64,000 bases of DNA from positions 186,001-250,000 of the forward strand of contig JAANOX010000142.1 of the NCBI GenBank assembly GCA_020184695.1, read 5' to 3'. This DNA is from Histomonas meleagridis 2922-C6/04-290x (Eukaryota; Protista; Parabasalia). Positions 1,502-38,580 of this stretch are shown piece by piece. Positions within the stretch are counted from its first letter, which is position 1. Every line of letters begins with the position of its first letter. Both the position numbers and the translations under genes were made by a program. The notes beneath the pieces are model-generated. The model did no database searches and was not told where the DNA came from. It saw only the letters and a program-made list of their open reading frames with translations.

Positions 1502-4500
1502 ATGGAATTCTACAATGAATTCTTCGCCATAAACAGATTCATTTTCGATCATTTAACCAACAAGACAATAAAGCCTACTCTTTCTTCTCTTTTTTCTTCT
1601 TTGTGTTATTCTGTTTCTTCATTCCGTACTCAACTTTTAAAGTTTAATCTTCCAACAAGAATTAATAGACTTATTTCATTAGCAAAATCTGCCACCGTTA
1701 ATTCAGACCCCCCTCAAATTTACGTTTTACTAAAAGATTGTAATGACAATGATACACGTTTGAATTCTCTGTACATTGAACACTTTAAACAGTTAAAACC
1801 TTATCATTTCGACTTTTTAAATCTACTAAAAAAATATTCAAGTCATTCTTTACCACCAATATTAGATTATGACAAAAATTATGAATCGGATTATAAAAAT
1901 TATTTTATGTGGAATAGTTCTATACATATTATGCAAGATATTAAAATATTCAATCGTAAAATGGAAGAAATGTATGATAATATTCCGGAAATATTCAAAT
2001 CACTTGATGGTGATCAACGATTTCTTATTAATAGCAATTTATCAATCGGTTTTTTATATGGTAATGTTCAAATTGAAAATGGTGGTATTGGTTCACCTCA
2101 CTCTCATGGAACATTTTTTTTCAAGTTCAAGAAAAAGTGGTACAGGGTATCTAAACTTAGATTCCCTATTAAACAGCCATAAAAAGCCTGACATGGAGAA
2201 ACTGAATTCTATTTTAAATTAACTGATAAATAATAACCCGTTATATTCAGAAATTGCTCCACTGGATGTAAATTTCTACAGAACAAAAATCGATCCAGCT
2301 TTTGCATCAAACAATGATGTTATTGGTATTGCTGAGATACCCATTAGCGAAAATCAAAATAGCAATAAAATTGATTATACAAAAATACCAATTACATTGC
2401 CAAATTCCGAGAAATATGGTGAAATAATTTATGTTGATATATAACAGGCTCTATTAATGTGTTTTCCTATAATATTCCCTTTTGGCAATATGCCAATCAT
2501 TCCCGGTAAAACAATTCGCCAAAAAGCTGCTGTTCTTTTCGGTTCTCATTATTTGTTTAGGTGTGGTAGATTACAGTGTACAATTTTTCTTTTTTTATAT
2601 AATGCTATAATGGCTAAAAAAGCTTCTTTTATAAATAATAGAATTAATCTTCACGTGTTAAATTAGATATTAGATTTTGCCCGTTTGAGGAAATGTTAAT
2701 TCGGAAAAAAAGATTTACAAAAATTAAAAAAGATGGATTTAATCATTTAATTAAAAATATGAACTTTGGTGAAGTTACTAATTATTGCTGGCGTTTAGAA
2801 TTTCAAGCCAGAGGTGCACCACATGTTCATGCATTAATATGGCTTAAAGACAGATTAGAAAACATTTCTCGAAATTTTTTTGCATCTTTACCTTCTTCTA
2901 TTACACCAAAATTATCTGAATTAGTGAGGACCAACATGATTCATGAGTGTAAATTAATTAGGTGCAAAAAAGGTGATGAAACCGCCGCATGCAAATATGG
3001 CTTTCCCAAACAATCTTGCAATAGTATACATATTGACGAAAATGGTAATTTAGTTTTACCTAGAAATGACAATGAAAAAAGAATTGTGGAATACTCACCT
3101 TATTTTTTATTAACTTGGGGTGGTCATTGTCACATACATATTTTAAAAAATTCAGTTCATACAGAATGTTCAGCAAATGCTATACATTATATCGTTAAAT
3201 ATAATTTCAAAGCTGAACCAAATCTTAGAGTTCAAGTGGAACGTCAAAATGATACAAATGCAAATCCTTATCAAACCTTATTTCATGCTAGAATAGTATC
3301 TGTTGAAGAAGCTGTAACTAAAATTGTTTCTTATGAATATTTCGGATCAAGCATGTCTTCCACATATTTAACATTAAAACCTCCAGAAAGTAGGAAAACT
3401 TTATATAGAGATGGTGTTCAAATGCAACACCTATCGAAAAATATTTCAATCGACCAAAATGTTTAGAAAGTATTAATATTCTTGATTATTTATCATTTTA
3501 TGATATCGTTCCATCCAATTATTCAAACAAACAATATATTGATAAAATTAATAGAGGAAATAGTCCTGAACAAGCAGCAATTATTTTAAATAAGCCAAAT
3601 CGAACAGAACGACCAAGTAATACTCTTGCTGTCGGATCAAAATGGGAAGAATATAATTTAAATCCATTGGTTTTAATTGATTCAGAAGATTTTTTATATC
3701 CTGCTGAAAATTTAGAAAATGCTGAAGCTCTTAAAATTATGAGAAGGGGTAAGCCCCAAATAATATTAACTGAACGTTTTACAGTTACATTAAATATTGA
3801 TGATTTCTGCTATCTTAAAACTGTCCTTGCAAATTGCTGGAGATCAGACGAAGAAATTAAATCACATCAAGAAAGTTGGCAACAATCAATGGAATATCAT
3901 GGCGTTTCAATTCCAGAAGAAGATCATATATTTCAATATTATATAAAATTTGATTATTTATATGCTAAATTCTCCAAGATATAATACTCAAGATTTTATT
4001 ACAAATATATCTTCAATGAATTATGATATGTTTCCTTTTCTCAATGCTTTGAAAAATAAAATAAATAATGAAAATCAAATCAAAATTGATCAAGTATTAA
4101 ATTATATTAGATCAATAAATATTATAAATACAGATGTAATAACTGATATATCTAATCGTCCTCAAATTTTCAGATAAATAAATATATATGTTATTCATTT
4201 AATAATCAAGAAATCAATAAATCTAACATTAATTTAGCAAATTTCGAGCGAAAATTTAACGATGGAGAGCGTTATATATTCAATCAAGTTAAGAATAGAT
4301 TATTAGCCGGACAACAATTAACTGCATTTATAAAAGGAAAAGCAGGGACAGGAAAAAGTTTTCTTATCAATTCCATAATAAATTTGTTGAAAATCAATGA
4401 AATTCCATATGTTGTATGTGCTTCTACAAGTATGGCAGCAAGTTTAATAGATGGTAAAACAGTTCATCCAACATTTGGATTATTTACTATAAAAAAAAAT

Positions 4501-9538: not shown

Positions 9539-9814
9539 ATGTCTGAACCAACTCAAGTTTCAGTTACACCAGAAGTAGAATTTTTAACACTAGATGAACT
9601 TTGCGATGAAGATAATGAAATCGTGTTTGTTCAGCATAGCCCAGAAATTTCAGCTGATCAAATTGCAAAAGAATTATTTCAACCTCAATCCCAAAAATCT
9701 CTCTTAATCTCATCAATTACATCACAGGTTCCTGTGTACCCTGTTGCATTCGATGATGGGAAAATTCACATTATAAAACCTGTTGATCGATATTACATTG
9801 CAACAAAAAAATAA
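9539..9814 (+). CDS. Small acidic hypothetical protein (91 aa from ATG 9539)
   Basis: Coding-like composition and a TAAA stop. Head-to-head with the ARM gene. Confidence 0.45.
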   Translation: MSEPTQVSVTPEVEFLTLDELCDEDNEIVFVQHSPEISADQIAKELFQPQSQKSLLISSITSQVPVYPVAFDDGKIHIIKPVDRYYIATKK

Positions 9815-10058
9815 AGTATACAGTTTGATTATAAATACATAAATAAAGTTTATTGAAAACGAAATGGTTTTTGGTAAAAAAAATTTAAAATTAATAAAAT
9901 TTAAATATTTCTAATAATTATTAAACAAATTACATTTGCGATTTTGTATTGATTAAAATGATTGTAAAATCAGTATTAAATATTTAATTTGATACATAAC
10001 ATTGGTGTAATGATTGAATGAGTTTGCAAAAGATGATCAAAAGATCAAATTTTATATA

Positions 10059-10085
10059 CAGTGTTTCCAAAAACGATAGGTCAGT
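10059..10085 (+). repeat. Left terminal inverted repeat
   Basis: CAGTGTTTCCAAAAACGATAGGTCAGT, preceded by TA (10057-10058). Confidence 0.92.
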
Positions 10086-10112
10086 CGATACGACGGTTAT
10101 GGGGTGACCACA

Positions 10113-11021
10113 ATGAATCATATGCCGATGTCCATGGTCAATGCCAGAATGGAAATCATTCATCATTTATATGATGAAAAAAACATTTCTCAAATACGCC
10201 AATTGACTGGCTATGGATGTGATATAATTCGTAAAGTAAAAATGCAAATCGAACAAGGTGATAATATGTTTTTATTAAAAAACAAAATTGGTGCACCAGC
10301 GAAACGAACTAAAGAGCTTGAAGAAGAAGTAATCAGATTAGTCACAGAAGATAGAAGGGCTGGACTTTGTAGAATTGCGAAAAATGTGACTGAAAATGGT
10401 TAACCAATAAGTAAAAGTTTAGTAGCCAATATACTACACGACAACCATTTTAATTATCTTCCGCCGAGAAAAACATTCCTATTGTCTGAAAAGGAAAAAC
10501 AATCTCGGGTATCATTTTGTAATCATCATCTTTTAAACAATACAGATTGGAAATCTGTATTGTTTACTGACGAATCACTCTTTATTCTCGGGCCGAATAG
10601 AAGGTGGCTTTGGAGAAGAAAAGGAGAGATTGACCAATGCATATATTCTCCACAAGAGAAATACCCTCAATGAATCATGGTATTTGGAGGTATTTCTTAT
10701 AACTATCATACACCTTTAATCGCGTTAACAGGAACAATTAATGCTCAGCGATATGTTTCGGATTGTATTCAAAGATCTCAGCTAATAACGGGAATGAATG
10801 AAATATATGGTGAGAAAAATTGGGTTTTGATGCAGGATGGCGCATCAATACATAAAAGCAGTTTAACGAATAATTACATAGAAGAGGAATGCAATATATT
10901 GAAGAATTGGCCTGTCAATTCCCCTGACCTCAACTTTATCGAAAATTTGTGGGCCATAATGAAAGACAGGGTTGAACAGGTCTGTCTTTCATGTGTTTTT
11001 GTTCACATGAAGCGTCAATGA
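10113..11021 (+). pseudogene. Tc1-like DD34E transposase pseudogene
   Basis: Three ORF-track pieces share one frame, broken by TAA 10401-10403 and TGA 10671-10673. Motifs: N-terminal HTH (GAPAKRT), VLFTDES, MVFGGIS, MQDGASIH, WPVNSPDLNFIENLW, with 34 residues between the second D and the E. Homology ends near 10983, so the C-terminus is missing. Confidence 0.92.
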
Positions 11022-11049
11022 ATGCCTGATTTCATAAAACGAGGAAATT

Positions 11050-11440
11050 ATTAACACCATTATTACTACATATGTCTGTTGGAGTAGCATTAAATACAAT
11101 AATTTTGTGTATGCAACTTTTGATGCTAATGAATGTATCATTAACAAATTTGCGAAAAATATTGACTTCGAAGACCTCGGACAATTTTGTTATAATATGT
11201 ATATCAATATCATTTCTATGTTGATAAAAAAATTAAACATTATTTTTTACATTGAATTTTCTATATCATCATTGATACTTTATTACCTGATACTCTCTAT
11301 ATCTTTCTATACTCATATTTAGAATTTTTTTTACCAATCATTAATTCAAATTGTATTGAAAAAGTTTTTTATAACTGTAATAAATTCATCGAAAATTATT
11401 TTGAAATATTCGAACCTTTTCCATCTATCGTTCACCGATA
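11050..11440 (+). pseudogene. Highly decayed BspA/LRR_5-like remnant
   Basis: Fragments such as LPDTLYIF and CIEKVFYNCNKF resemble LRR_5 units. Confidence 0.35.
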
Positions 11441-12118
11441 GCATATGGGGAATGACATAATTATTTTTAAAAATTTATATTTTTAATCCGATGTTTGATG
11501 TCTATTTTATTCGTAACACAAATCATTTATAATATCATATAACATCAATTTTTTCGTTAATGAGTTCAAATTAAAAATATATCCCTTTGCCATCTTTTTA
11601 ATTTTTATTTTTCCAAATACTTCATACATAAAATCAATTCTTATCTTTTAAAAAGAAATTGAACTTTAAAATAATGTGTTGAGAAATTGATCTGAATTTT
11701 AATACATTGATTTTTTGAAAAAATGAGTTAATTTGTAAAAAAACATATTTGCCAAAAAAAAATAAACTATTTTTACTTGTCACAAGAAACAAAGTCATAA
11801 TATTATGAAATATTTTATTCATATAAATAATAAAATCTTTATAGTTTATTTTCCTTTTATTTGATTTTAAAATACGGTTTAACAGTATTAACAGTATTAT
11901 TTCTTAATTGATAATACATAATCATAATGTACATCATTAAAATCAAAGAAAACTTCCAAATTTATCTTAATATTTATTTTCATTTTGAAGATATTTACCA
12001 GTAATTTCTTTTTTGAAGTGAAATTTTTGAAAGGAAGTATTCGTCTTATGTCTTTTGTGTCTTATTTTTTGGACTCACAAATCATTTTCACTATTATTTT
12101 ATTTTCGTAGTATTAAGA

Positions 12119-13426
12119 ATGATTGCTCTGATATTTTACTATCTAATAGTACCAACATTTGGAAAATTTGATAATCAAACAAAAACACTTACAATAGAAA
12201 CCATGGAGGATTTTAAAAATGCATCTACCTACAAAAAAGAAACATTAACTTTGATTATCGGTGATAATATTACTTCAACTCCATCCGATGCATTTAGAGG
12301 GTGGGGTAATCTAGCAACTGTTCAAATTGGAAATTCATTATCTCATATTGGTAATGATACATTTTTTAGTTGCACAAATTTGTCATATGTTACCTTTGGC
12401 CCAAATGTTACTATAGTTGGTGAAAGCGCATTTTTTAACTGCACTAAATTATCAAAAGTTATTTTCAATGAAAAATTGATTAAAATTTATAATTTTTCAT
12501 TTATGCAATGTTCATCACTTAGAAGAATTAAATTCCCTCAATCACTGACAATTATTGGAAATAGTTCGTTTTTTGAATGCCACAACTTATCGGAAGTAAT
12601 TTTTAACGAAAAACTGACCAGTATTGGCATGGGAGCATTTTTATCTTGTTCACTTGTGCAAATTAAATTACCAAATTCACTCACTGCAATTGGAAGTTAT
12701 GCATTTTGTCGTTGTTCTGATTTATCAGATGTCACCTTTGGAAATAACATAACTACAATTGAGACTGATGCATTCAGCTTTTGCAAATCTCTTAAAAAGA
12801 TCGAAATTCCAAATTCAATAACTATTCTCAATGAAGAAGTTTTTGCATTTTGTTATAATCTATCAGTTGTTATTATAGGTGAAAATCTGGTTTCAATTGA
12901 TCATCATGCATTCTATGAATGTAAATCTCTAACTTGTGTTTATTATAAAGGTCACTCAGAACCTAAAATTGATGAAGAAGCATTTGATGAAACTCCTCTC
13001 AAATATGTAATGACATTAGATTCTTATAATTCAACAAAATTCGGTAAATTCAATGTATCAATTGGATCCACAATCGAAAAATGTGGTCCATGGCCAACAC
13101 GCACAATCCCTGAATCGATCACATTTACACATTCGAATACAATTACACATTCGATCACATTTACACATTCGAATACAATTACACATTCGATCACATTTAC
13201 ACATTCGAATACAATTACACATTCGATCACATTTACACATTCGAATACAATTACAAATGCAAATACATCTTCACCATCAACATATACAAATTCTATAATA
13301 TATTCTATTTCATTCACGAATTCAAATATTACATCAAATTCTTTTCCATCAGAAGCTACTTCAAAAACTGTCCAGCTTGCTTTTGGCGTAAGTATTTTTT
13401 CATTATTATTTTTAATTTTATTCTAA
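12119..13426 (+). CDS. BspA: BspA-like leucine-rich-repeat (LRR_5) surface protein, 435 aa
   Basis: Signal peptide; about 10 TpLRR units (IPNSITILNEEVFAFCYNL); CVYYKGHSEP cap; Thr/Ser stalk; hydrophobic C-terminus. Confidence 0.92.
   Translation: MIALIFYYLIVPTFGKFDNQTKTLTIETMEDFKNASTYKKETLTLIIGDNITSTPSDAFRGWGNLATVQIGNSLSHIGNDTFFSCTNLSYVTFGPNVTIVGESAFFNCTKLSKVIFNEKLIKIYNFSFMQCSSLRRIKFPQSLTIIGNSSFFECHNLSEVIFNEKLTSIGMGAFLSCSLVQIKLPNSLTAIGSYAFCRCSDLSDVTFGNNITTIETDAFSFCKSLKKIEIPNSITILNEEVFAFCYNLSVVIIGENLVSIDHHAFYECKSLTCVYYKGHSEPKIDEEAFDETPLKYVMTLDSYNSTKFGKFNVSIGSTIEKCGPWPTRTIPESITFTHSNTITHSITFTHSNTITHSITFTHSNTITHSITFTHSNTITNANTSSPSTYTNSIIYSISFTNSNITSNSFPSEATSKTVQLAFGVSIFSLLFLILF
13115..13258 (+). 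repeat. 4 x 36-nt coding tandem repeat (SITFTHSNTITH)
   Basis: Near-identical units TCGATCACATTTACACATTCGAATACAATTACACAT. Confidence 0.95.
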
Positions 13427-14058
13427 TAAACATTTCTGTGTAACCTTTTCAAAATCATATCATTACTTCAATAAATAATTTTAATGATTTCAACTTTTCG
13501 ATGAGTAAATAACATCAATTCTCTTTGTGATTTTTTGCTTAAAATTTATTGTTAATGGATAAAAAATCATCTTTTTTTACTTCTATTAATATAATAATAA
13601 TATTTTGCCCATTTTAAGATGTTCATGGTTTAATATGGTGGTATACATAATAAGATATCTTATTCAACTTTAAAAAAATTCATTATTATCCATTTTAACT
13701 AAATTTTTTGGTTAAAGAGTTTTTTAATTAAAATGAGAGAATCAAAACAGGAAAGGCAAGCATGCAATGGTTACGATCATCTTGATTGAATCATTAGCTC
13801 CTTTGATGGGAGAAATTTTGTGAATGATTATTGTCTATTCATAACAAATACGACAACATATTTTATTTTGGCTTTGGTTCAGTTTCAGCACCAGTGTTAA
13901 ATCTCTGATGAAAAAAGCCGATAACCACAAAAAGTTTTATTCAAACAGTTTTCGAATACACGTTAATGAATAAACCTTTCTGAAAAAGATATCTTTTAGT
14001 CACCGTTTCTCAAAAAGTTATTCTTTTTTGATATAAATAATAGTTTTACATTCACTTC

Positions 14059-14085
14059 ACTGACCTATCGTTTTTGGAAACACTG
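14059..14085 (-). repeat. Right terminal inverted repeat
   Basis: 27/27 reverse complement of the left TIR, followed by TA (14086-14087). Confidence 0.92.
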
Positions 14086-14200
14086 TATTTTACACATTCG
14101 AATTAAGAGTGAATTCCCCAAAATGTCAAACATAGCCTCCCACACTAACAGTTAATAAACTTCGTTTATGTTTAGGAGAGGAATTTGAACAGGTAGACCT

Positions 14201-14455
14201 ATGTTTCATATTCAAGTTAAATATATTATGTATGAAAATGAGAAATATGAACTAGATTCCAAAAGAAGGTTAATAAACTTTAATCAAAATCAATCTTTAA
14301 ATATTTCCAATTTACAAAACATTGGTGTGTTCCAACAAATCAAAGATTTATCCAAAGAAGAAGAAATAAACAAAAAAACAAATGATGCGATAGGAATTGA
14401 AAGGATGTTTATCATATCAAATTATTCGCAGAAATTATTATATGAGATGATTTAA
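14201..14455 (+). CDS. Small hypothetical protein (84 aa)
   Basis: ATG ORF with plausible composition; no family recognised. Confidence 0.4.
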   Translation: MFHIQVKYIMYENEKYELDSKRRLINFNQNQSLNISNLQNIGVFQQIKDLSKEEEINKKTNDAIGIERMFIISNYSQKLLYEMI

Positions 14456-31656: not shown

Positions 31657-33786
31657 TTAAATCTCTATGTAATTGATCTCTCCGTCGCTTCCAACTTCAA
31701 AGAATGACTTCTCAATGAGTGAATTCAGACACATTTCGAAATCTTCTTTTGTCACATCAAATTGAGATGAATTTTTCAGCTCAACTAATAGCTTTTCTTT
31801 GTTGGATGACCTTAGTCTCTTCATTATCATGACTAGTGCGGCCTCGATCTTCATTTTTCGAATTGCAAATATTTCATCAATTGTTTGCTTTTTCATTTTT
31901 TTAGGTGATAAAAATGAAGGAACTGGCAATACAATATTTCCTTCATTTTCATTTTCTGTTATTTCGTATTGATTATTTTCTTTTTTGATGATTCCTTTCT
32001 GAAGGAGGACGTTTATGGCGGCCGTTACGCTATCGGCGTTTATACCGGTTTCTTCTATTAACGTTCCCTTTACAATTGATTCAATTATCAAATAATAAAC
32101 GGTCGACCCGGTGATAACGGTTTTGTTCAAAACGAATGTACAAGAAGACAAAACGTCCATCCATTCCAATGTTCTCCTTTTGTAATGCTCCTTATAGAAA
32201 GTTACAAACTGAGACTGCGAGTCTAGAATTTCTAATGGGATTCTAAGTCTCTCTTTTTGATATCTGGGCCAATTCTCCTCAGAAATAAGAACAAATCTAA
32301 TTTGAAAGCTAGCAGAAGCGGTGAACTCTGAATTAACAACTTTTGTATGGTCGAAATCATTGATCATCCCGACCATCGATTTTACATCTTCTTCACCACA
32401 AATCATTTGGAGCTTCTCTATGAAGTCTGTCTCGACAGAAGGAACATCTTCGTAGTTAAGAAGCCTCATACCTAAGAATTGCTTATAATGTTCAACAAAT
32501 ACATCCATCGATTCAAATTGTCGAAACAGAAGAATGATCGAATCAATCATTTTATCGAATTCTTCGGAGTTTTCGATAATGTTAACGTGGCAGAACTTTG
32601 CAAGGAGAAATGCGATTCGAAGTGATGCCTTATTAATGGAATGTTTGAACTCTTTTTCAACATCTTTCGAATCAACATTTGGTTTGCAGACTACAATAGA
32701 GTGATGAATTTGAAGGAGTTCTTTTATCACATTGATACTTTTAAGTGAAAGTGCATTTGCGCATTGATTAGAAACTTCTTTTGTCCAAACATCATCAAAA
32801 CATTGATATAATTCTGTGTCTTCTGCTATCGAAATTAAATTCGAAAGAAGTTCAAGACATTTGAAATCTTTTAATTCATAAATTTTTGTTATTGTATTTA
32901 CCATTATATTTTGGATCTTTTTAACATATAAACACTCATATACATGGTGCATATAGGACTTACGTATATCTATAGGGAACTTTTCGATTATTTTTTCTTC
33001 TTGAGTCACTACACGTTTAATTGCTTTCAAAAATTCAATTTGATCTGCATCGTCGATGTTGAAATTTGAATAAAATTCTTCGGTTTGACGATTTAATTCT
33101 GATGTGAAATTTCCTTCGATTTCAAATGAAGAAATTATTTCGATTGTTTGGTTGATGTACATTTCTTGTGGTGGAATTGTGTCATTGCCTTCGACTTCGA
33201 TTTTCCTTTGGTTTGTAATGCATCCAGCAAGCGTTTTACAAATTTCATCAATTAATTGTTGTTTTTGATGAAGTTTTTGTTTGAGGAAATAGATAACTAC
33301 ACCTTTAATTGTCTTTGGTGACATAAAGCTCCTTTCAAATACTGTAAATATAGATGATATTAAGGTAATTACTCTTTGGATTTCACACCATGAAGAAATT
33401 ATTGAATCGATGTCGCTTTTGGATTCAATATTTTCAATCATTTGCTTAGAAAAAAGATCTAGCTTTTCCGTAAGTTTTGCATTGATCTTTTCTGTGTTTT
33501 CTGCTTTTTTGTTTAATCTTTCAACACTTCTGAATGCAGGTTCAAAATTAGCTTGACTCGAATTAGAAATAACAGACGTAATACATGAATTGATTATTGA
33601 CCATTGAGAATCAAAATCCTCTTCTGACGATGGTGTAGGAACGCTAACCTTATTTACAATTACTTTTGTTGGTCTCAAAGGTCTCCTTGATTTGACGCCT
33701 GATACTTTTGATGTTTTTATCTCGACTTTAGAAGATTCGAGTGTTATTCTGTTCAGAATTTGGCTCATGGCGCCATCTTGAGACAT
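31657..33786 (-). CDS. Cullin-family protein
   Basis: Cullin homology region (FVEHYKQFLGMRLL, WPRY, FYKEHYKRRTLEW) and neddylation segment IEAALVMIMK. Confidence 0.88.
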   Translation of the reverse strand: MSQDGAMSQILNRITLESSKVEIKTSKVSGVKSRRPLRPTKVIVNKVSVPTPSSEEDFDSQWSIINSCITSVISNSSQANFEPAFRSVERLNKKAENTEKINAKLTEKLDLFSKQMIENIESKSDIDSIISSWCEIQRVITLISSIFTVFERSFMSPKTIKGVVIYFLKQKLHQKQQLIDEICKTLAGCITNQRKIEVEGNDTIPPQEMYINQTIEIISSFEIEGNFTSELNRQTEEFYSNFNIDDADQIEFLKAIKRVVTQEEKIIEKFPIDIRKSYMHHVYECLYVKKIQNIMVNTITKIYELKDFKCLELLSNLISIAEDTELYQCFDDVWTKEVSNQCANALSLKSINVIKELLQIHHSIVVCKPNVDSKDVEKEFKHSINKASLRIAFLLAKFCHVNIIENSEEFDKMIDSIILLFRQFESMDVFVEHYKQFLGMRLLNYEDVPSVETDFIEKLQMICGEEDVKSMVGMINDFDHTKVVNSEFTASASFQIRFVLISEENWPRYQKERLRIPLEILDSQSQFVTFYKEHYKRRTLEWMDVLSSCTFVLNKTVITGSTVYYLIIESIVKGTLIEETGINADSVTAAINVLLQKGIIKKENNQYEITENENEGNIVLPVPSFLSPKKMKKQTIDEIFAIRKMKIEAALVMIMKRLRSSNKEKLLVELKNSSQFDVTKEDFEMCLNSLIEKSFFEVGSDGEINYIEI

Positions 33787-34106
33787 TTTAGAAAAATTTT
33801 ATTATGGGGTGACCCACATAACGTTTATTAATTCAATTGAATTGATTTCAGATAGTGATTTAAAATCTGACAATTTTTTTTGACCGTTAACATATGATCA
33901 TCCTTCAAAATAAAGAACCCAATTAATAATTCAAGAAGTTATTAATAGAAAGAGTAGATTCAAACTTACAAAGAAAAAAATTTCCTGACTTTTTTCTATT
34001 TACACATTATAAATTTGTTAATTAAAGTTAATCAATCTATCATTTCTAAAGCTGCTTTAAATGATAATTTATTCAGTATAAAGTTTAAACTTAATTATAG
34101 GCGAAA

Positions 34107-35522
34107 TTAAAAATATTTACTTAAAAAAAATCCGATTGTTCCAACAATTGCAATACATGTCCCGATTAGTAAAGAAAACCTCATTTTTCTTTCCTCATCA
34201 AAAAGTTGTGTTCTGAAAACATTAAACTTGTTGTGTACTTTCAAATGATAATCGCATGCATTTTTCAATATTTTTGAGGCAGCGCTTACTTTAGACGTCG
34301 CAAACTGTGATTCAATCATCACTTCCTTGAGCATTCCTGTCATTTGAGCAACTTTTTTATCGATTTCAACCAAATCTTTTGCAAGTTTATCACACGTTTT
34401 ATCACATTCATTCGTGTTTTCTACAATACGATTTGTCATCCATTCAACTTTTGTTTTTGGATCAGGAATAACCTCAAGGCTACGATTAATAACATCTGTA
34501 ACTTCTTTTGATAGTGGGTCATCCGAGTCGAACGTTAACTTCCCCAAAGCCGGGAAATAAACGTGCGCTAAATCAAAGTGAATATCTGCCGATTCAAAAA
34601 TTGGCAATTTTTCAGGTATTGGGATGTCACATTTGCTATAAAGTTCTCTAATTGTGCGCCTATCGCAAAACCCTGTTTGTGGAATACAATTGTCTTTCTG
34701 AAATGACAATAAAGAGCTTGAAATATGATCAAAATCATCTGTGTTAGTTATGTTATATCCAAGCTTTGTTAATGTATGACAAACATGTGAGAGTGAACTA
34801 AGAATTACATAAAAATGCGTGTGATTTTTCATTGGAAATGGGATGGAATAGAATAAAAAATCAACTTCTGGTGAGTTTTCTAGATATGGAATTAATGAAC
34901 CAAAGCAAAAAGGTCGATTACTTTTAACAGATTCGAATGCATCAGAAAGTGTATTGATGTTGAAAAACTTAGAAGCAAATTGAAGGCGTTTGTAAAGAAT
35001 AGTTAATGAATTTATTAAATCACCATTCATTTGGTAAATTTGACGGAATTGAAAATTGATTATATTACTCATTGAGTTGATATAAAATGCAGCGGGTGGT
35101 AATTCAGAAACAATGCCTAAGTGATGAAGTGCTGATAGCGAATTATAATCATCTTGAGATATTCCCCAATCACCTGTTTTAACTTTAACAGCGCTACAAT
35201 CTTTGTCTAAATTTTCAAAATACGTGGGTGATATATGAATTATAATTTGTGAGTCATCATACTGAGTTTCTGTGAATCCAAGAGATTGAAAATCTGGTTT
35301 TGTAGTAAAAGTGCATTGATACATGTGAGATTTTTTTCCATCTTTTTTTAGAGCAACAGCATAAAATGGAAATCCAATTTTATCAAGACGATCAAGAAAT
35401 GTATAAATTGAATAGCCTTCAACTTCAACTGGATCTAAGTTATACTGTGTTGCACATTCACATAAAAATTCATTACATTCAACTTGTTCTGGAATTAGAT
35501 AAATTTGCTTGGATGCATCCAT
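34107..35522 (-). CDS. STB6-like N-terminal-domain protein with C-terminal TM helix
   Basis: VEGYSIY and SLLSFQK..IPQTGFCDRRTI resemble the fungal STB6-like family; terminal hydrophobic helix. Confidence 0.5.
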   Translation of the reverse strand: MDASKQIYLIPEQVECNEFLCECATQYNLDPVEVEGYSIYTFLDRLDKIGFPFYAVALKKDGKKSHMYQCTFTTKPDFQSLGFTETQYDDSQIIIHISPTYFENLDKDCSAVKVKTGDWGISQDDYNSLSALHHLGIVSELPPAAFYINSMSNIINFQFRQIYQMNGDLINSLTILYKRLQFASKFFNINTLSDAFESVKSNRPFCFGSLIPYLENSPEVDFLFYSIPFPMKNHTHFYVILSSLSHVCHTLTKLGYNITNTDDFDHISSSLLSFQKDNCIPQTGFCDRRTIRELYSKCDIPIPEKLPIFESADIHFDLAHVYFPALGKLTFDSDDPLSKEVTDVINRSLEVIPDPKTKVEWMTNRIVENTNECDKTCDKLAKDLVEIDKKVAQMTGMLKEVMIESQFATSKVSAASKILKNACDYHLKVHNKFNVFRTQLFDEERKMRFSLLIGTCIAIVGTIGFFLSKYF

Positions 35523-35601
35523 AAAAATCCTTTCGAGAACGTTTTTTTAACGGCTTCAATACCGTTTATTTCTGGGCGTTATATCTAAACGTACAGATTT
35601 T
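35523..35601. promoter_or_regulatory. 79-bp bidirectional promoter with two opposed M3-like motifs
   Basis: TAACGGCT at 35548 (AGCCGTTA on the minus strand) and TACCGTTT at 35560, one per divergent gene. Confidence 0.6.
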
Positions 35602-36387
35602 ATGATTGAAACACCAACATCAAGAATCCCTCATTTTTCAAGACAACAAAGATTAAATGACCAGGAAACTTACCGCTTCAGCTCACCTCAGGTTCGTCAA
35701 CATGTTTCAAAAGATACCTCTCAGATATTATTAAATAAGTTAATAAATGATAATAATCAACTAGAAAATAAATTAAAAAATCTCAGAATCCAATATAAAA
35801 AATTCCAACTAACTACACAACCTCAATCTCACTATTCATCACCACAACTTGTACAAAAGAAAATTGATTTGAAAAATCAATTAACTGTTTTAAATGCCAA
35901 ATCCCAATCATTAGACAAAGACATCATTATACAAAAAGCAAAATTAGAAGATATAACAAAAACAAATAAGAAAATCATTGAAAAAGAAGAACAATTTGCC
36001 TCTTTAACAGCAAATTATCAAGATTTGCAAAAACAAGAGCAAAGTCTTATGAAGAAGAAACAAGAAAAGTTACAAGAAAGGATTGAACAAATAAAGAATA
36101 AAACTAAAGCTCATGTGGATCATATTATACAAGAAAAGATCATTTTGGAAAAAGATATTAAAATATTTCAAAGTTTGAACCTTTCTATACAAACAGAGAA
36201 CATTAATGAGTTGGTCAATTCCACAGACAAAACTTTCTCACCTGAGATTTCTATGAAACTCATCAAAGATTTAAATGAAGCGAAGAAAAAGCTTTATCTT
36301 CTTGAGAACAAATGCATTAATTTTCAGAATTTCGTTGGGCTTCGTGATCCATTAAAATACCAAAAAATTATGTCGCAAAATGCATAA
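35602..36387 (+). CDS. Coiled-coil hypothetical protein (261 aa)
   Basis: Intact ATG ORF, Q/K/E-rich. Confidence 0.8.
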   Translation: MIETPTSRIPHFSRQQRLNDQETYRFSSPQVRQHVSKDTSQILLNKLINDNNQLENKLKNLRIQYKKFQLTTQPQSHYSSPQLVQKKIDLKNQLTVLNAKSQSLDKDIIIQKAKLEDITKTNKKIIEKEEQFASLTANYQDLQKQEQSLMKKKQEKLQERIEQIKNKTKAHVDHIIQEKIILEKDIKIFQSLNLSIQTENINELVNSTDKTFSPEISMKLIKDLNEAKKKLYLLENKCINFQNFVGLRDPLKYQKIMSQNA

Positions 36388-38580
36388 CCCATAATATGTT
36401 ATCTTTAGAAATATCTATTTAAATAAAATTTTGTCTTTTTTTAGTTTAATTAAGTGTTGATACTAATAAGTTTAAATTTGTTTTAATATTATTTTCCAGC
36501 AATTCAAATCGCGCAACTAAAAGGTTATACCATAAGAGAAAATTTCCTTCGCTTTGAATGCCACTTCTTGTCTTTCTGTCAGTAATGAAGATAGTTTTAA
36601 AGATGAACAAAACCAACACAAATTTGAAGAAAACAATATAAAAGAAAATATCAAAACAAAAGCACTCAAACTTATGATAATCATCAAACTCACAAAATTC
36701 AATGTAATTTTACTTTTGATGAAATATACTCATGGAAGTAAATGTAAAAATAATGTTATAAAGTGATTTGTAAAAAATGACAAACAAAATAGTTCATGAC
36801 AACATGACTCTGGATAATTTGCTTTTTTATAATTTTAGTGAAAAATGCTGTGATTATATTCAGCATTTGTATGTGTTCTATAGGTGTTTCTTACTTAATA
36901 ATAACTTAATATTTTAAAATATTAAATTTAATAACATATGTCATATGACTCTTTTAAAGTTTTGGAAAATGAAGTACAATTTCTGGTGTAAATTTTTCTT
37001 TAAAAAAAATGAATTTCATTTTTGTATATTATATTTCTATTATTATTATTATTATTTTTTTTTTTTTTATTTTTTCGTATTTACATTATAATTTATGAAT
37101 TGATTTTGTCTTTCTATACACCATGATCATTTAAAAAAATTCACAACAAATCACGACTATTTGCATCAGGTTTATTTTTTACTCATCCTTATTTTTAATA
37201 AAAAAATTCCAAAAATCTATTCTTGTTGCTCGTAATGTTTATTTTTGGTATCATGACTCAGATATCTTATTAATATTGTATTTAATTTTTTTTACCTACA
37301 CTATCTTTATCTTTGATCCTGTTTTTACAAATTTAACTTTTCTAATGATAAAAAATATTGTTTATTATCAGCTGATAAACTTTTTCATAAACCGATTACA
37401 ACCACGAAGTTTTGAAAGGATAAATGATATTGATTGAAAAGTTTACTTTAAATTTCATTATTTTTTATTTCGGTGATAAAATAAACTACAGAATTTTACT
37501 TTCTTTATCAAAAATTTCTTTTCGAAGAGCCACGGTTATTCAGAATGACAAATGCATCCGATGATGCCTATTCCCGGTTATAATCATTTCATTTCAATGC
37601 AAGGTCTGTACTGTCAAGCTATACCTTGATGCTTTAAGAAATAATTTTTTATTCTCAACATTATTTATTGAATTTTGAATTTGTAATTGAACTTACTTGC
37701 ACATAGCAGTTTTGCTTAGCAAAGAGAAATAGAATTCCTTGTCGCAACCCTTATTTTTCGAAAACCAACTGATACCTAAATATTCATTATTATCATGATC
37801 AAAAAAGAAAAAAAATTATAGAAGAAAAAAAATTTCATGAAATTTACAAGAACTGATCAATCAATGTTATTACCGTTTTATTTATTGAGCAGAGACAAGT
37901 TGATAAAAATTGATAAATTACTAAATTTCGAAATATAAATGTTGTGTCCTTCTTTGCACCTATGAAGGATAAAATTTGTTACTGAACATACCCATGTAAT
38001 GTATATTTTTTGCAAATAATATAATTTGCAATTAAATATTGGGAAAATTTTTACTGAAAACAATATAATTTCCATGCTGACCCTTTTTGTTATGTTTTTT
38101 GTGCCTATGAACAATATTTCTTACTCTTGACTAATTTCATAATAATTATTTTAAAAAAAATTTATTGTAATTATTTCACAATGAAAAATATGTATGTGTG
38201 TATGGAGCAAATCTTTTTGTACAAAAAACATCGAATTTCATGGGAAACCTATTTCTGATGAAAACATAATAAGGTTTCAACCTCGTGTTGGGTTGCCCTA
38301 AAAATCAGTCAGCGATTCCCGGTAATCACCGTAAAATATTTTCATTTTTTACACCCGATGTTGTCAAAGAGGTTTTTCTACAGCCCAGAAAAGTCAAGAT
38401 CACCGTTAAAAATAAACACAATGTTCAGTAAAATTCAATTGAATAGGGGTTTTCTCTCAAAAATTTTTAAGTTTACGACTCAATATTGAGTCAAACGGCT
38501 ATCGTTCTTTCAATTATTTGTGAACGTTTCCGGTGCAAATTCTGATTCCCGGTCAAGAATCATATTTAAGGTTGCATACA

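What the first reader, a model, noticed from the sequence alone, without database searches (positions are those of the whole stretch)
10059..14085. Tc1-like composite transposon enclosing an intact BspA surface-protein gene
Seen: perfect 27-bp TIRs, each flanked by TA, bracket 4,027 bp containing a dead DD34E transposase, a BspA-like remnant and an intact 435-aa BspA gene. Known: Tc1 elements duplicate TA, typically carry only a transposase, and non-autonomous copies are mobilised in trans. BspA genes are a very large surface-protein family in trichomonads. Inference: the TIRs are still identical although the transposase has two nonsense codons and a lost C-terminus. The unit could be a cargo-carrying element that spreads BspA genes, a mechanism for the family's expansion that I do not know to be described.
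Basis: partly seen in the sequence, partly recalled or inferred. Interest (0 to 1): 0.9.

Follow-up and report, generated by a model that had tools for sequence, protein, structure and literature searches.

The report
BspA gene lodged inside dead Tc1
A broken Tc1-type jumping gene in the poultry parasite Histomonas meleagridis has a complete, transcribed BspA surface-protein gene lodged just behind its transposase, but this looks like a one-off nested insertion, not a transposon that spreads BspA genes.

Summary
Perfect 27-bp TIRs at 10059-10085 and 14059-14085, each flanked by TA, enclose a dead DD34E Tc1 transposase and an intact 435-aa BspA (LRR_5) gene. Two details fail. No BspA-like remnant is detectable. 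The transposase C-terminus is damaged, not lost.

The window is Histomonas meleagridis, GCA_020186115.1. In related Tc1 elements only 125-135 nt separate the stop codon from the element end. Here 119 nt (13967-14085) play that role. So one Tc1 copy carries a ~2.9-kb insert (11055-13966) directly behind its stop codon, with TTAA on both sides.

Illumina contigs of two DNA samples place the Tc1/insert junction in an exact-match contig at single-copy depth. Close relatives of the insert are about 2-6 copies, at least as many as the ~3 Tc1 copies. They leave the window's sequence at 13966 into unrelated DNA, not into a Tc1 end.

The best reading is a piece of a multi-copy BspA repeat unit that landed once in a Tc1 copy. 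The BspA copy is transcribed.

The idea that Tc1 spreads BspA is not supported. Sibling loci could not be fetched, so a single past move of the whole unit is not excluded.

The parts
10057..10058 (.). TA target dinucleotide at the left end
   Evidence: Read directly. Obligatory for Tc1/mariner, so not informative about whether the ends moved as a unit.
10059..10085 (+). Left terminal inverted repeat, 27 bp, perfect
   Evidence: two matches in the window, none in 100 shuffles. A flank contig runs 9700-10081 and then breaks, because the TIR is repeated in the genome.
10113..10982 (+). Dead Tc1 DD34E transposase. One frame, with in-frame stops at 10401-10403 and 10671-10673. Catalytic D at 10569-71 and 10836-38, E at 10941-43.
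   Evidence: tblastn to P0121, P0276 and P0279 is continuous over 10119-10982 at 48-50% identity. Pfam HTH_Tnp_Tc3_2 and DDE_3. Alignment.
10983..11003 (+). 21-nt stretch private to this copy, replacing a longer stretch of the transposase C-terminal region
   Evidence: Sibling contigs leave the window after 10982 (reading EPNDLETLKQ) and rejoin at 11004 (preceded by LKRAWNK). Relatives align only up to 10982.
11004..11054 (+). Remnant of the transposase C-terminus. The frame shifts at AATG AATG (11017-11024). Stop codon TAA at 11052-11054.
   Evidence: Translation gives ..SM / MPDFIKRGNY*, compared with ..DSMPDRLARVIALNGAPNGY* in the same-genome relative P0341. The frameshift is an inference.
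11051..11054 (.). TTAA at the left edge of the insert, overlapping the stop codon
   Evidence: The chance that two given places carry the same 4-mer is 0.0085 in this window.
11055..13966 (+). Inserted ~2.9-kb block carrying the BspA gene. The left edge lies between 11055 and 11063.
   Evidence: Relatives have only 125-135 nt between stop codon and element end. Sibling contigs of the block start at 11063 and leave at 13966. The exact single-copy contig 10806-11092 spans the left junction.
11055..12118 (+). Non-coding DNA upstream of BspA. It is multi-copy in the genome. 11584-11897 is silent in RNA.
   Evidence: No Pfam hits. Summed depth is about 6-27 times the single-copy flank. RNA depth is 0 at 11584-11897.
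12119..13426 (+). Intact BspA-type LRR surface-protein gene, 435 aa. Hydrophobic N-terminus, LRR_5 core, Thr/Ser-rich tandem stalk, hydrophobic C-terminal end.
   Evidence: Pfam LRR_5, 7e-90. Exact-match RNA contigs at 11910-12490, 12575-12899 and 12916-13144.
13103..13282 (+). Tandem repeat of 18/36-nt period encoding (ITFTHSNTITHS)x4 in the stalk
   Evidence: the repeat finder family D1; translation.
13963..13966 (.). TTAA at the right edge of the insert
   Evidence: Block siblings also read ..ACACGTTAA here, then continue with unrelated CGTTCACTCC.
13967..14058 (+). Canonical Tc1 3' segment, with an inner TIR-core-like copy near 14013-14028
   Evidence: The length from stop to element end is 119 nt, against 125 nt in L002 and 135 nt in L006. 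The TIR in L002 is similar. Tc1 sibling contigs cover it at about 2-3 copies. The inner TIR-core-like copy was read by eye; the motif scan printed no match for it.
14059..14085 (-). Right terminal inverted repeat, 27 bp, perfect
   Evidence: A flank contig starts at 14061.
14086..14087 (.). TA target dinucleotide at the right end
   Evidence: Read directly.

Best explanation
This is one copy of a young, low-copy Tc1-like DD34E element of Histomonas meleagridis. Its canonical size would be about 1.1-1.2 kb.

The transposase is dead: two nonsense codons, a small replaced stretch and a frameshift near the C-terminus.

A ~2.9-kb piece of a multi-copy BspA repeat unit was inserted directly behind the stop codon, at a TTAA. 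The piece holds about 1 kb of upstream DNA, the whole 435-aa gene and about 0.5 kb of downstream DNA.

The insert has no terminal inverted repeats. Its genomic siblings continue beyond its right edge. I therefore infer that it entered by a repair-type event at a break, using TTAA microhomology, and not as a discrete transposon.

The BspA gene keeps its own upstream region and is transcribed.

The composite exists once in this genome. It is not the vehicle by which BspA genes multiplied. BspA segments duplicate by another route, and one copy happened to land in a Tc1.

Because the TIRs are intact, the unit could in principle be cut and pasted by a sibling's transposase. Nothing shows that this has happened.
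For: Shown:
- TIRs, TA, the transposase domains and lesions, and the intact BspA.
- A Tc1 relative in the same genome (L002) has 125 nt from stop codon to element end, with a near-identical right TIR. The P0272 family is 1,331 bp with 135 nt after the stop. The window has 119 nt once 11055-13966 is removed. The two Tc1 parts are therefore complementary, with nothing missing.
- TTAA lies at both edges.
- In one search the contig 10806-11092 has 0 differences and spans the left junction. Its depth is 569 and 474, against 615 and 506 in the unique flanks of the two DNA runs.
- The window's own allele near the right end also has single-copy depth (13744-13920 at 563; 596 at position 14041).
- Sibling contigs of the block are at about 2-6 copies (11063-11248; 12149-12490 with 10 differences; 13429-13592). 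Siblings of the Tc1 5' part are at about 2 copies.
- The block-sibling contig leaves the window at 13966 and runs on for 190 to over 255 nt of unrelated sequence.
- No joint 10058>14086 (an empty site) was seen.
- Exact-match RNA contigs cover BspA, while 11584-11897 and 14096-14400 are silent.

Inferred: the repair-type mechanism, and the order of events.
Against: - Sibling loci could not be fetched, so copy numbers rest on summed k-mer depths of Logan contigs. These are rough, and only a subset of contigs was listed.
- The two DNA samples come from one study and are probably one lineage.
- A clean TTAA on both sides looks more like a target-site duplication than a repair scar.
- Cut-and-paste movement leaves copy number unchanged, so a single-copy composite may still have moved here as a unit.
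- The long-range linkage of the two TIRs rests on the public assembly.
Confidence: 0.62

Rival explanations
1. The BspA block is itself a discrete mobile unit. It would be TIR-less, about 2.9 kb, and inserted at TTAA with duplication of TTAA. It might move through a TTAA-specific transposase acting in trans or through a circular intermediate recombining at TTAA. It hit a Tc1 copy as one of its targets.
For: TTAA lies at both edges, with P about 0.01-0.04 by chance allowing for a few registers. A block sibling also reads TTAA at its right edge. The two block ends show similar sibling depth patterns in the two DNA runs: 2.0x/4.9x at 11063-11248 and 2.4x/5.2x at 13890.
Against: There are no terminal inverted repeats. 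The ends (CACC.. and ..CACG) fit neither piggyBac nor the RR termini of Kolobok (PMC6004289), nor Helitron TC/CTRR. The sibling contig continues unbranched for at least 190 nt beyond the edge at about 5-copy depth, so the siblings share DNA beyond the block. The first shared base on the left is 11063, not 11055.
Confidence: 0.17
2. This is a cargo-carrying, Pack-type Tc1. The BspA gene was captured earlier, and the whole TIR-to-TIR unit transposed to this TA site, possibly more than once, mobilised in trans.
For: The TIRs are perfect with TA flanks. Sibling Tc1 copies are transcribed well above neighbouring genes (depth 283 in X4), so a transposase source may exist. Pack-Mariner elements carrying host gene pieces are described in rice (PMC8903248).
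Against: The junction is single copy in both DNA runs. No second composite and no empty site were seen. No intact transposase closer than about 50% identity to this copy turned up in the protein collection that holds the H. meleagridis annotation. Block siblings are not followed by a Tc1 end.
Confidence: 0.12
3. Two independent Tc1 insertions, each truncated on its inner side, flank a resident BspA gene. Alternatively, the structure is a mis-assembly through repeats.
For: TA flanks are uninformative. No single short-read contig bridges the whole unit.
Against: The left part runs exactly to the stop codon. The right part has the full canonical length of a 3' segment, 119 nt against 125-135 in relatives. 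The two truncations would have to be exactly complementary. Chains of exact-match DNA and RNA contigs support each internal stretch. The public assembly is long-read based (PMC8529796).
Confidence: 0.06

Closest known systems
Tc1-like DD34E elements of the Tc1/mariner superfamily. Nearest found: a second family in H. meleagridis (P0341, named 'Transposable element Tcb1 transposase' by NCBI) and 1.33-kb elements from gut metagenomes (P0272, P0121).
   Same: TA target, a CAGTG-type TIR with the shared core AAAAACGAT, HTH plus DDE_3 transposase with DD34E spacing, and a short 3' segment with an inner copy of the TIR core.
   Different: This copy is dead, and it holds 2.9 kb of foreign DNA with a complete gene behind the stop codon. 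Its relatives hold only the transposase.
Pack-TYPE transposons, including Pack-Mariner of rice (PMC8903248)
   Same: A non-autonomous TIR element whose interior holds host gene sequence.
   Different: Pack elements usually carry gene fragments and are recognised as families with several copies. Here a whole expressed gene sits in a single-copy structure with no sign of mobilisation.
TTAA-duplicating superfamilies piggyBac and Kolobok (PMC6004289)
   Same: The insert is flanked by TTAA on both sides.
   Different: There are no terminal inverted repeats, no RR or CCC termini and no transposase. Siblings appear to extend beyond the edge.
BspA-like LRR surface proteins of trichomonads. 94 LRR_5 proteins are reported in H. 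meleagridis (PMC8529796).
   Same: LRR_5 core, a hydrophobic N-terminus and a membrane-anchor-like C-terminus.
   Different: Nothing unusual in the protein itself. Only its location is unusual.

Membership tests
Tc1/mariner superfamily, Tc1-like DD34E | TA target-site duplication | tested here: met
   TA at 10057-58 and 14086-87.
Tc1/mariner superfamily, Tc1-like DD34E | Terminal inverted repeats starting CAGTG | tested here: met
   27/27 complementary, with only two matches in the window. The right TIR of the same-genome relative L002 is similar.
Tc1/mariner superfamily, Tc1-like DD34E | DDE transposase with 34 residues between the second D and E, plus an N-terminal HTH | tested here: met
   DDE_3 at 5e-12. 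HTH_Tnp_Tc3_2 scores 31.2 bits on a fragment, against a cutoff of 31.5. D153, D242 and E277.
Autonomous Tc1 element | Uninterrupted transposase ORF | tested here: not met
   Stops at 10401 and 10671, a replaced stretch at 10983-11003 and a frame shift at 11017-24.
Pack-TYPE (Pack-Mariner) cargo transposon | Host gene sequence between the TIRs of a non-autonomous element | tested here: met
   The whole LRR_5 gene at 12119-13426 lies inside the TIRs.
Pack-TYPE (Pack-Mariner) cargo transposon | Evidence of mobilisation as a unit: several copies sharing the same internal junctions, or polymorphic or empty sites | tested here: not met
   The left junction lies in an exact contig at single-copy depth in both DNA runs. 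No empty-site joint was seen. This rests on contig depths, not on a full genome search.
Composite transposon (two elements bracketing cargo) | Two separate element copies, each with its own ends | tested here: not met
   There is one TIR pair only. The left and right Tc1 parts add up to one canonical element.
piggyBac / Kolobok (for the inner block) | TTAA target-site duplication | tested here: inconclusive
   TTAA is present at both edges. However, the left edge is only located to 11055-11063, and the right TTAA is also present in the sibling.
piggyBac / Kolobok (for the inner block) | Terminal inverted repeats with family-typical termini (CCC..GGG, or RR) | tested here: not met
   The ends are CACCATT.. 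and ..ATACACG. No inverted repeat is found at the edges. The RR rule is taken from PMC6004289.
Helitron (for the inner block) | 5' TC and 3' CTRR ends, inserted between A and T, with a 3' hairpin | tested here: not met
   None of the five possible registers gives TC..CTRR (read). A Helitron Rep remnant does exist elsewhere in the window.
BspA-like LRR proteins | Pfam LRR_5 (PF13306) repeats | tested here: met
   E = 7.3e-90, 297.8 bits, three stretches.

The most novel reading that the evidence does not exclude
BspA gene cassettes in Histomonas are themselves mobile. On this reading they are TIR-less blocks of about 3 kb that integrate at TTAA, through a TTAA-specific enzyme or a circular intermediate. 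Once inside a Tc1 shell with intact TIRs, such a cassette gains a second route of movement. Together these would give a concrete mechanism for expansion and reshuffling of this adhesin-like family.
Probability: 0.13. Interest if true: 0.7.

Novelty: new member of a known kind. Interest (0 to 1): 0.3.

Why it matters
BspA-like proteins are the main candidate adhesins of trichomonads, and how these families expand is an open question. If a Tc1 shell moved whole BspA genes, it would be a rare case of whole-gene transduplication by Tc1/mariner and a direct mechanism for antigen-family growth in a poultry pathogen.

The evidence instead points to an ordinary nested structure present once. Its value is smaller:
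- It documents a young Tc1 family in H. meleagridis whose siblings are transcribed.
- It shows that near-identical BspA segments of several kb are being copied to new places.
- It supplies one sharply defined, TTAA-bounded junction from which the copying mechanism could be worked out.

Tried and rejected
- Homologue search with the BspA protein was swamped by long bacterial LRR proteins. The best identity was 42% and no paralogue was found.
- Exact look-ups of the BspA, the transposase pieces and most neighbouring ORFs found nothing. The public gene models differ from simple ORFs, and only the 471-aa and 703-aa proteins matched.
- The TIR is absent from JGI metagenome contigs.
- Earlier scan notes by sequence were blank.
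- Earlier notes of a C-terminal Myb domain on Tc1 transposases of this genome prompted a check of the stretch behind the stop codon. No Pfam domain was found there.
- 'BspA-like remnant': rejected.
- Inner TIRs or MITE-like boundaries in the insert: only AT-rich chance matches.
- piggyBac, Kolobok and Helitron readings of the block: the termini do not fit.
- The two-element composite: rejected on the complementary geometry.
- A 196-nt 'skip' joint (11263>11460, one contig, 23-nt side) was too weak to interpret.
Full report
**Observation**

The 27-nt sequence CAGTGTTTCCAAAAACGATAGGTCAGT occurs exactly twice in the 64-kb window, at 10059-10085 (+) and 14059-14085 (-). No matches appeared in 100 dinucleotide-preserving shuffles. 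TA lies outside both ends.

Between the ends, Pfam finds HTH_Tnp_Tc3_2 (10404-10673) and DDE_3 (10677-11018). The 435-aa ORF at 12119-13426 hits LRR_5, the BspA-type repeat, at E = 7e-90.

The transposase is read in a single frame from 10113 to 10982. It is about 50% identical to intact 303-341-aa relatives, and the alignment is continuous. It has in-frame stops at 10401-03 and 10671-73. Catalytic D153, D242 and E277 are present with DD34E spacing.

**Two details that do not hold**

- *BspA-like remnant.* No stop-free segment of the interior, on either strand, hits any Pfam family even at E <= 10. The best look-alike, on the minus strand at 11041-11232, scores worse against 121 LRR_5 proteins than its own shuffles.
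- *Lost C-terminus.* Contigs of sibling copies read on after 10982 with codons for EPNDLETLKQ, and they rejoin the window at 11004 after LKRAWNK. A short stretch has been replaced by 21 private nucleotides (10983-11003). The last codons (..SM, then PDFIKRGNY and TAA at 11052-54) are still there. They are out of frame at an AATG AATG repeat (11017-11024). Compare ..DSMPDRLARVIALNGAPNGY in relative P0341.

**The identical TIRs are not a puzzle**

Sibling contigs differ from the window by only about 2-5%. Zero changes in 54 nt is therefore likely. TA flanks accompany every Tc1 end and do not show that the two ends arrived together.

**Source of the window**

A 471-aa and a 703-aa protein of the window are on record exactly in GCA_020186115.1, contig WSYJ01000075.1. 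The fetched 5.4 kb is 100% identical to window 32107-37522. The organism is Histomonas meleagridis.

Its genome paper reports 28.7% GC, 94 LRR_5 proteins and only 0.23% annotated interspersed repeats (PMC8529796).

**Anatomy of the element**

- A second Tc1 family in the same genome (P0341, locus L002, 65% identity over the DDE part) ends 125 nt after its stop codon. Its right TIR, ACTGGTCTATCGTTTCGTGAAACGCTTTA, is plainly related to the one here.
- The P0272 family from gut metagenomes measures 1,331 bp from TIR to TIR, with 135 nt after the stop.
- In the window the stop codon is at 11052-54. The stretch 13967-14085 is 119 nt long. By my reading of the sequence it carries an inner copy of the TIR core near 14013-14028, as the relatives do; the motif scan printed no match for it.

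The left and right Tc1 parts therefore add up to one complete element of about 1.1-1.2 kb. The stretch 11055-13966 (2,912 nt) is an insert directly behind the stop codon. This makes 'two truncated elements around a resident gene' very unlikely.

Both edges of the insert are preceded by TTAA (11051-54 and 13963-66). The chance that two given places carry the same 4-mer is 0.0085 in this window.

**Copy number and context (Logan contigs of two DNA and two RNA runs)**

Depth in the unique flanks:

| Run | Depth in unique flanks |
|---|---|
| X1 | about 615 |
| X3 | about 506 |

Contigs carrying the window's own sequence:
- Flank contigs run into the TIRs and stop there (9700-10081 and 14061-14400), as expected for a repeated end.
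- A contig with no differences covers 10806-11092. It holds both the private 21 nt and the Tc1/insert junction, with 38 nt on the insert side. Its depth is 569 in X1 and 474 in X3, which is one copy.
- Near the right end the window's own allele is also single copy: 13744-13920 at 563, and 596 at position 14041.

Sibling copies:
- Siblings of the Tc1 5' part are at about 2 copies.
- Siblings of the Tc1 right end are at about 2-3 copies.
- Siblings of the insert are at about 2-5 copies at its ends (11063-11248; position 13890).
- Siblings of the BspA gene and its 3' flank are at about 5-6 copies (12149-12490 with 10 differences in 342 nt; 13429-13592 nearly identical).

The block sibling reads ..ACACGTTAA at 13958-66. 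It then continues for 190 to over 255 nt with unrelated sequence (CGTTCACTCC..), as one unbranched contig at about 5-copy depth. By contrast, a true Tc1 sibling reads TTAAATGAATAAACC.. into the right TIR and then a different flank.

So the insert's relatives are not followed by a Tc1 end, and they share DNA beyond the insert's edge. No contig joins 10058 to 14086, which would be an empty site.

**Expression**

- RNA-run contigs match the BspA copy without any difference at 11910-12490, 12575-12899 and 12916-13144. Depth is about 34-57, similar to the neighbouring gene.
- The stretches 11584-11897 and 14096-14400 have zero depth, so DNA carry-over is not the source.
- The dead transposase region and the left junction are also covered at low depth (exact contig 10806-11242 in X4).
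- Sibling Tc1 copies are transcribed much more strongly.

**Interpretation**

The best-supported reading has three parts:
- A young Tc1 copy received a piece of a longer, multi-copy BspA repeat unit at a break next to its stop codon. Whether it was already dead is unknown.
- The composite exists once in this genome.
- BspA segments multiply by some other route.

The mechanism of entry is inferred, not shown. Three things point to a repair-type capture using TTAA microhomology:
- The insert has no terminal inverted repeats.
- The first base shared with siblings on the left is 11063, which leaves up to 8 nt of possible filler.
- The siblings extend beyond the right edge.

The clean TTAA on both sides keeps a TTAA-specific integration alive as a rival. 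The termini, however, fit neither piggyBac, nor the RR ends of Kolobok (PMC6004289), nor Helitron ends.

A cut-and-paste move of the whole unit would not raise copy number, and the TIRs are intact.

**Comparison with known systems**

The shell is an ordinary member of Tc1-like DD34E elements. Host sequence inside Tc1/mariner-type TIRs is known from Pack-Mariner elements of rice (PMC8903248). Those carry fragments and are defined as multi-copy families. A whole expressed gene would be a notable variant only if it were mobilised, which the data do not show.

**Limits**

- I could not fetch sibling loci. The protein collections lack usable models for this region. The TIR is absent from JGI metagenomes. 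Read laying was limited to one call.
- Copy numbers are summed k-mer depths of contigs.
- Only part of the contig list was shown.
- The two DNA samples are from one study.
- The linkage of the two TIRs rests on the public long-read assembly.

**Verdict**

The cargo-transposon interpretation is not supported beyond the bare structure. This is a new member of a known kind, of modest interest.

Noticed in passing
window 2693-3463 (+): The ORF carries a Helitron_like_N / Rep domain (E = 4e-9). This is a Helitron remnant about 7 kb from the element, so gene-capturing rolling-circle elements exist in this genome.
   Followed up: partly
window 11961-12030: A ~70-nt stretch about 90-160 nt upstream of the BspA start is shared with other, highly expressed transcripts that have different DNA on both sides. 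RNA depth is 697 in X2, against about 35 for the gene. It may be a common leader or promoter module of BspA genes.
   Followed up: no
window 13530 and 13560: All short-read contigs carry one more T and one more A in two homopolymers than the assembly does. This is either residual long-read error in the public assembly or the majority sibling allele replacing the locus's own.
   Followed up: no
window 11063-11248 and 13782-13948: Sibling contigs of the two block ends are at about 2 copies in DNA run X1 but about 5 in X3, while Tc1 siblings are equal in both. This may be a copy-number difference of the BspA repeat unit between the two samples, or a depth artefact.
   Followed up: no
L002 5946-6683 (H. 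meleagridis WSYJ01000142.1): A second, more distant Tc1 family in the same genome (65% aa identity). It has a related right TIR but no recognisable left TIR within 2 kb. It is annotated as a 185-aa 'Tcb1 transposase'.
   Followed up: partly
window 13425-13438 and 13969-13982: The motif AATAAAC-TTTCTG follows both the BspA stop codon and the Tc1 stop codon. It is possibly a shared 3'-end processing signal.
   Followed up: no
L003 1398-2880: In a gut-metagenome contig that carries a related Tc1, a 741-nt perfect palindrome (99% complementary, 1 nt between the arms) lies directly behind the element.
   Followed up: no
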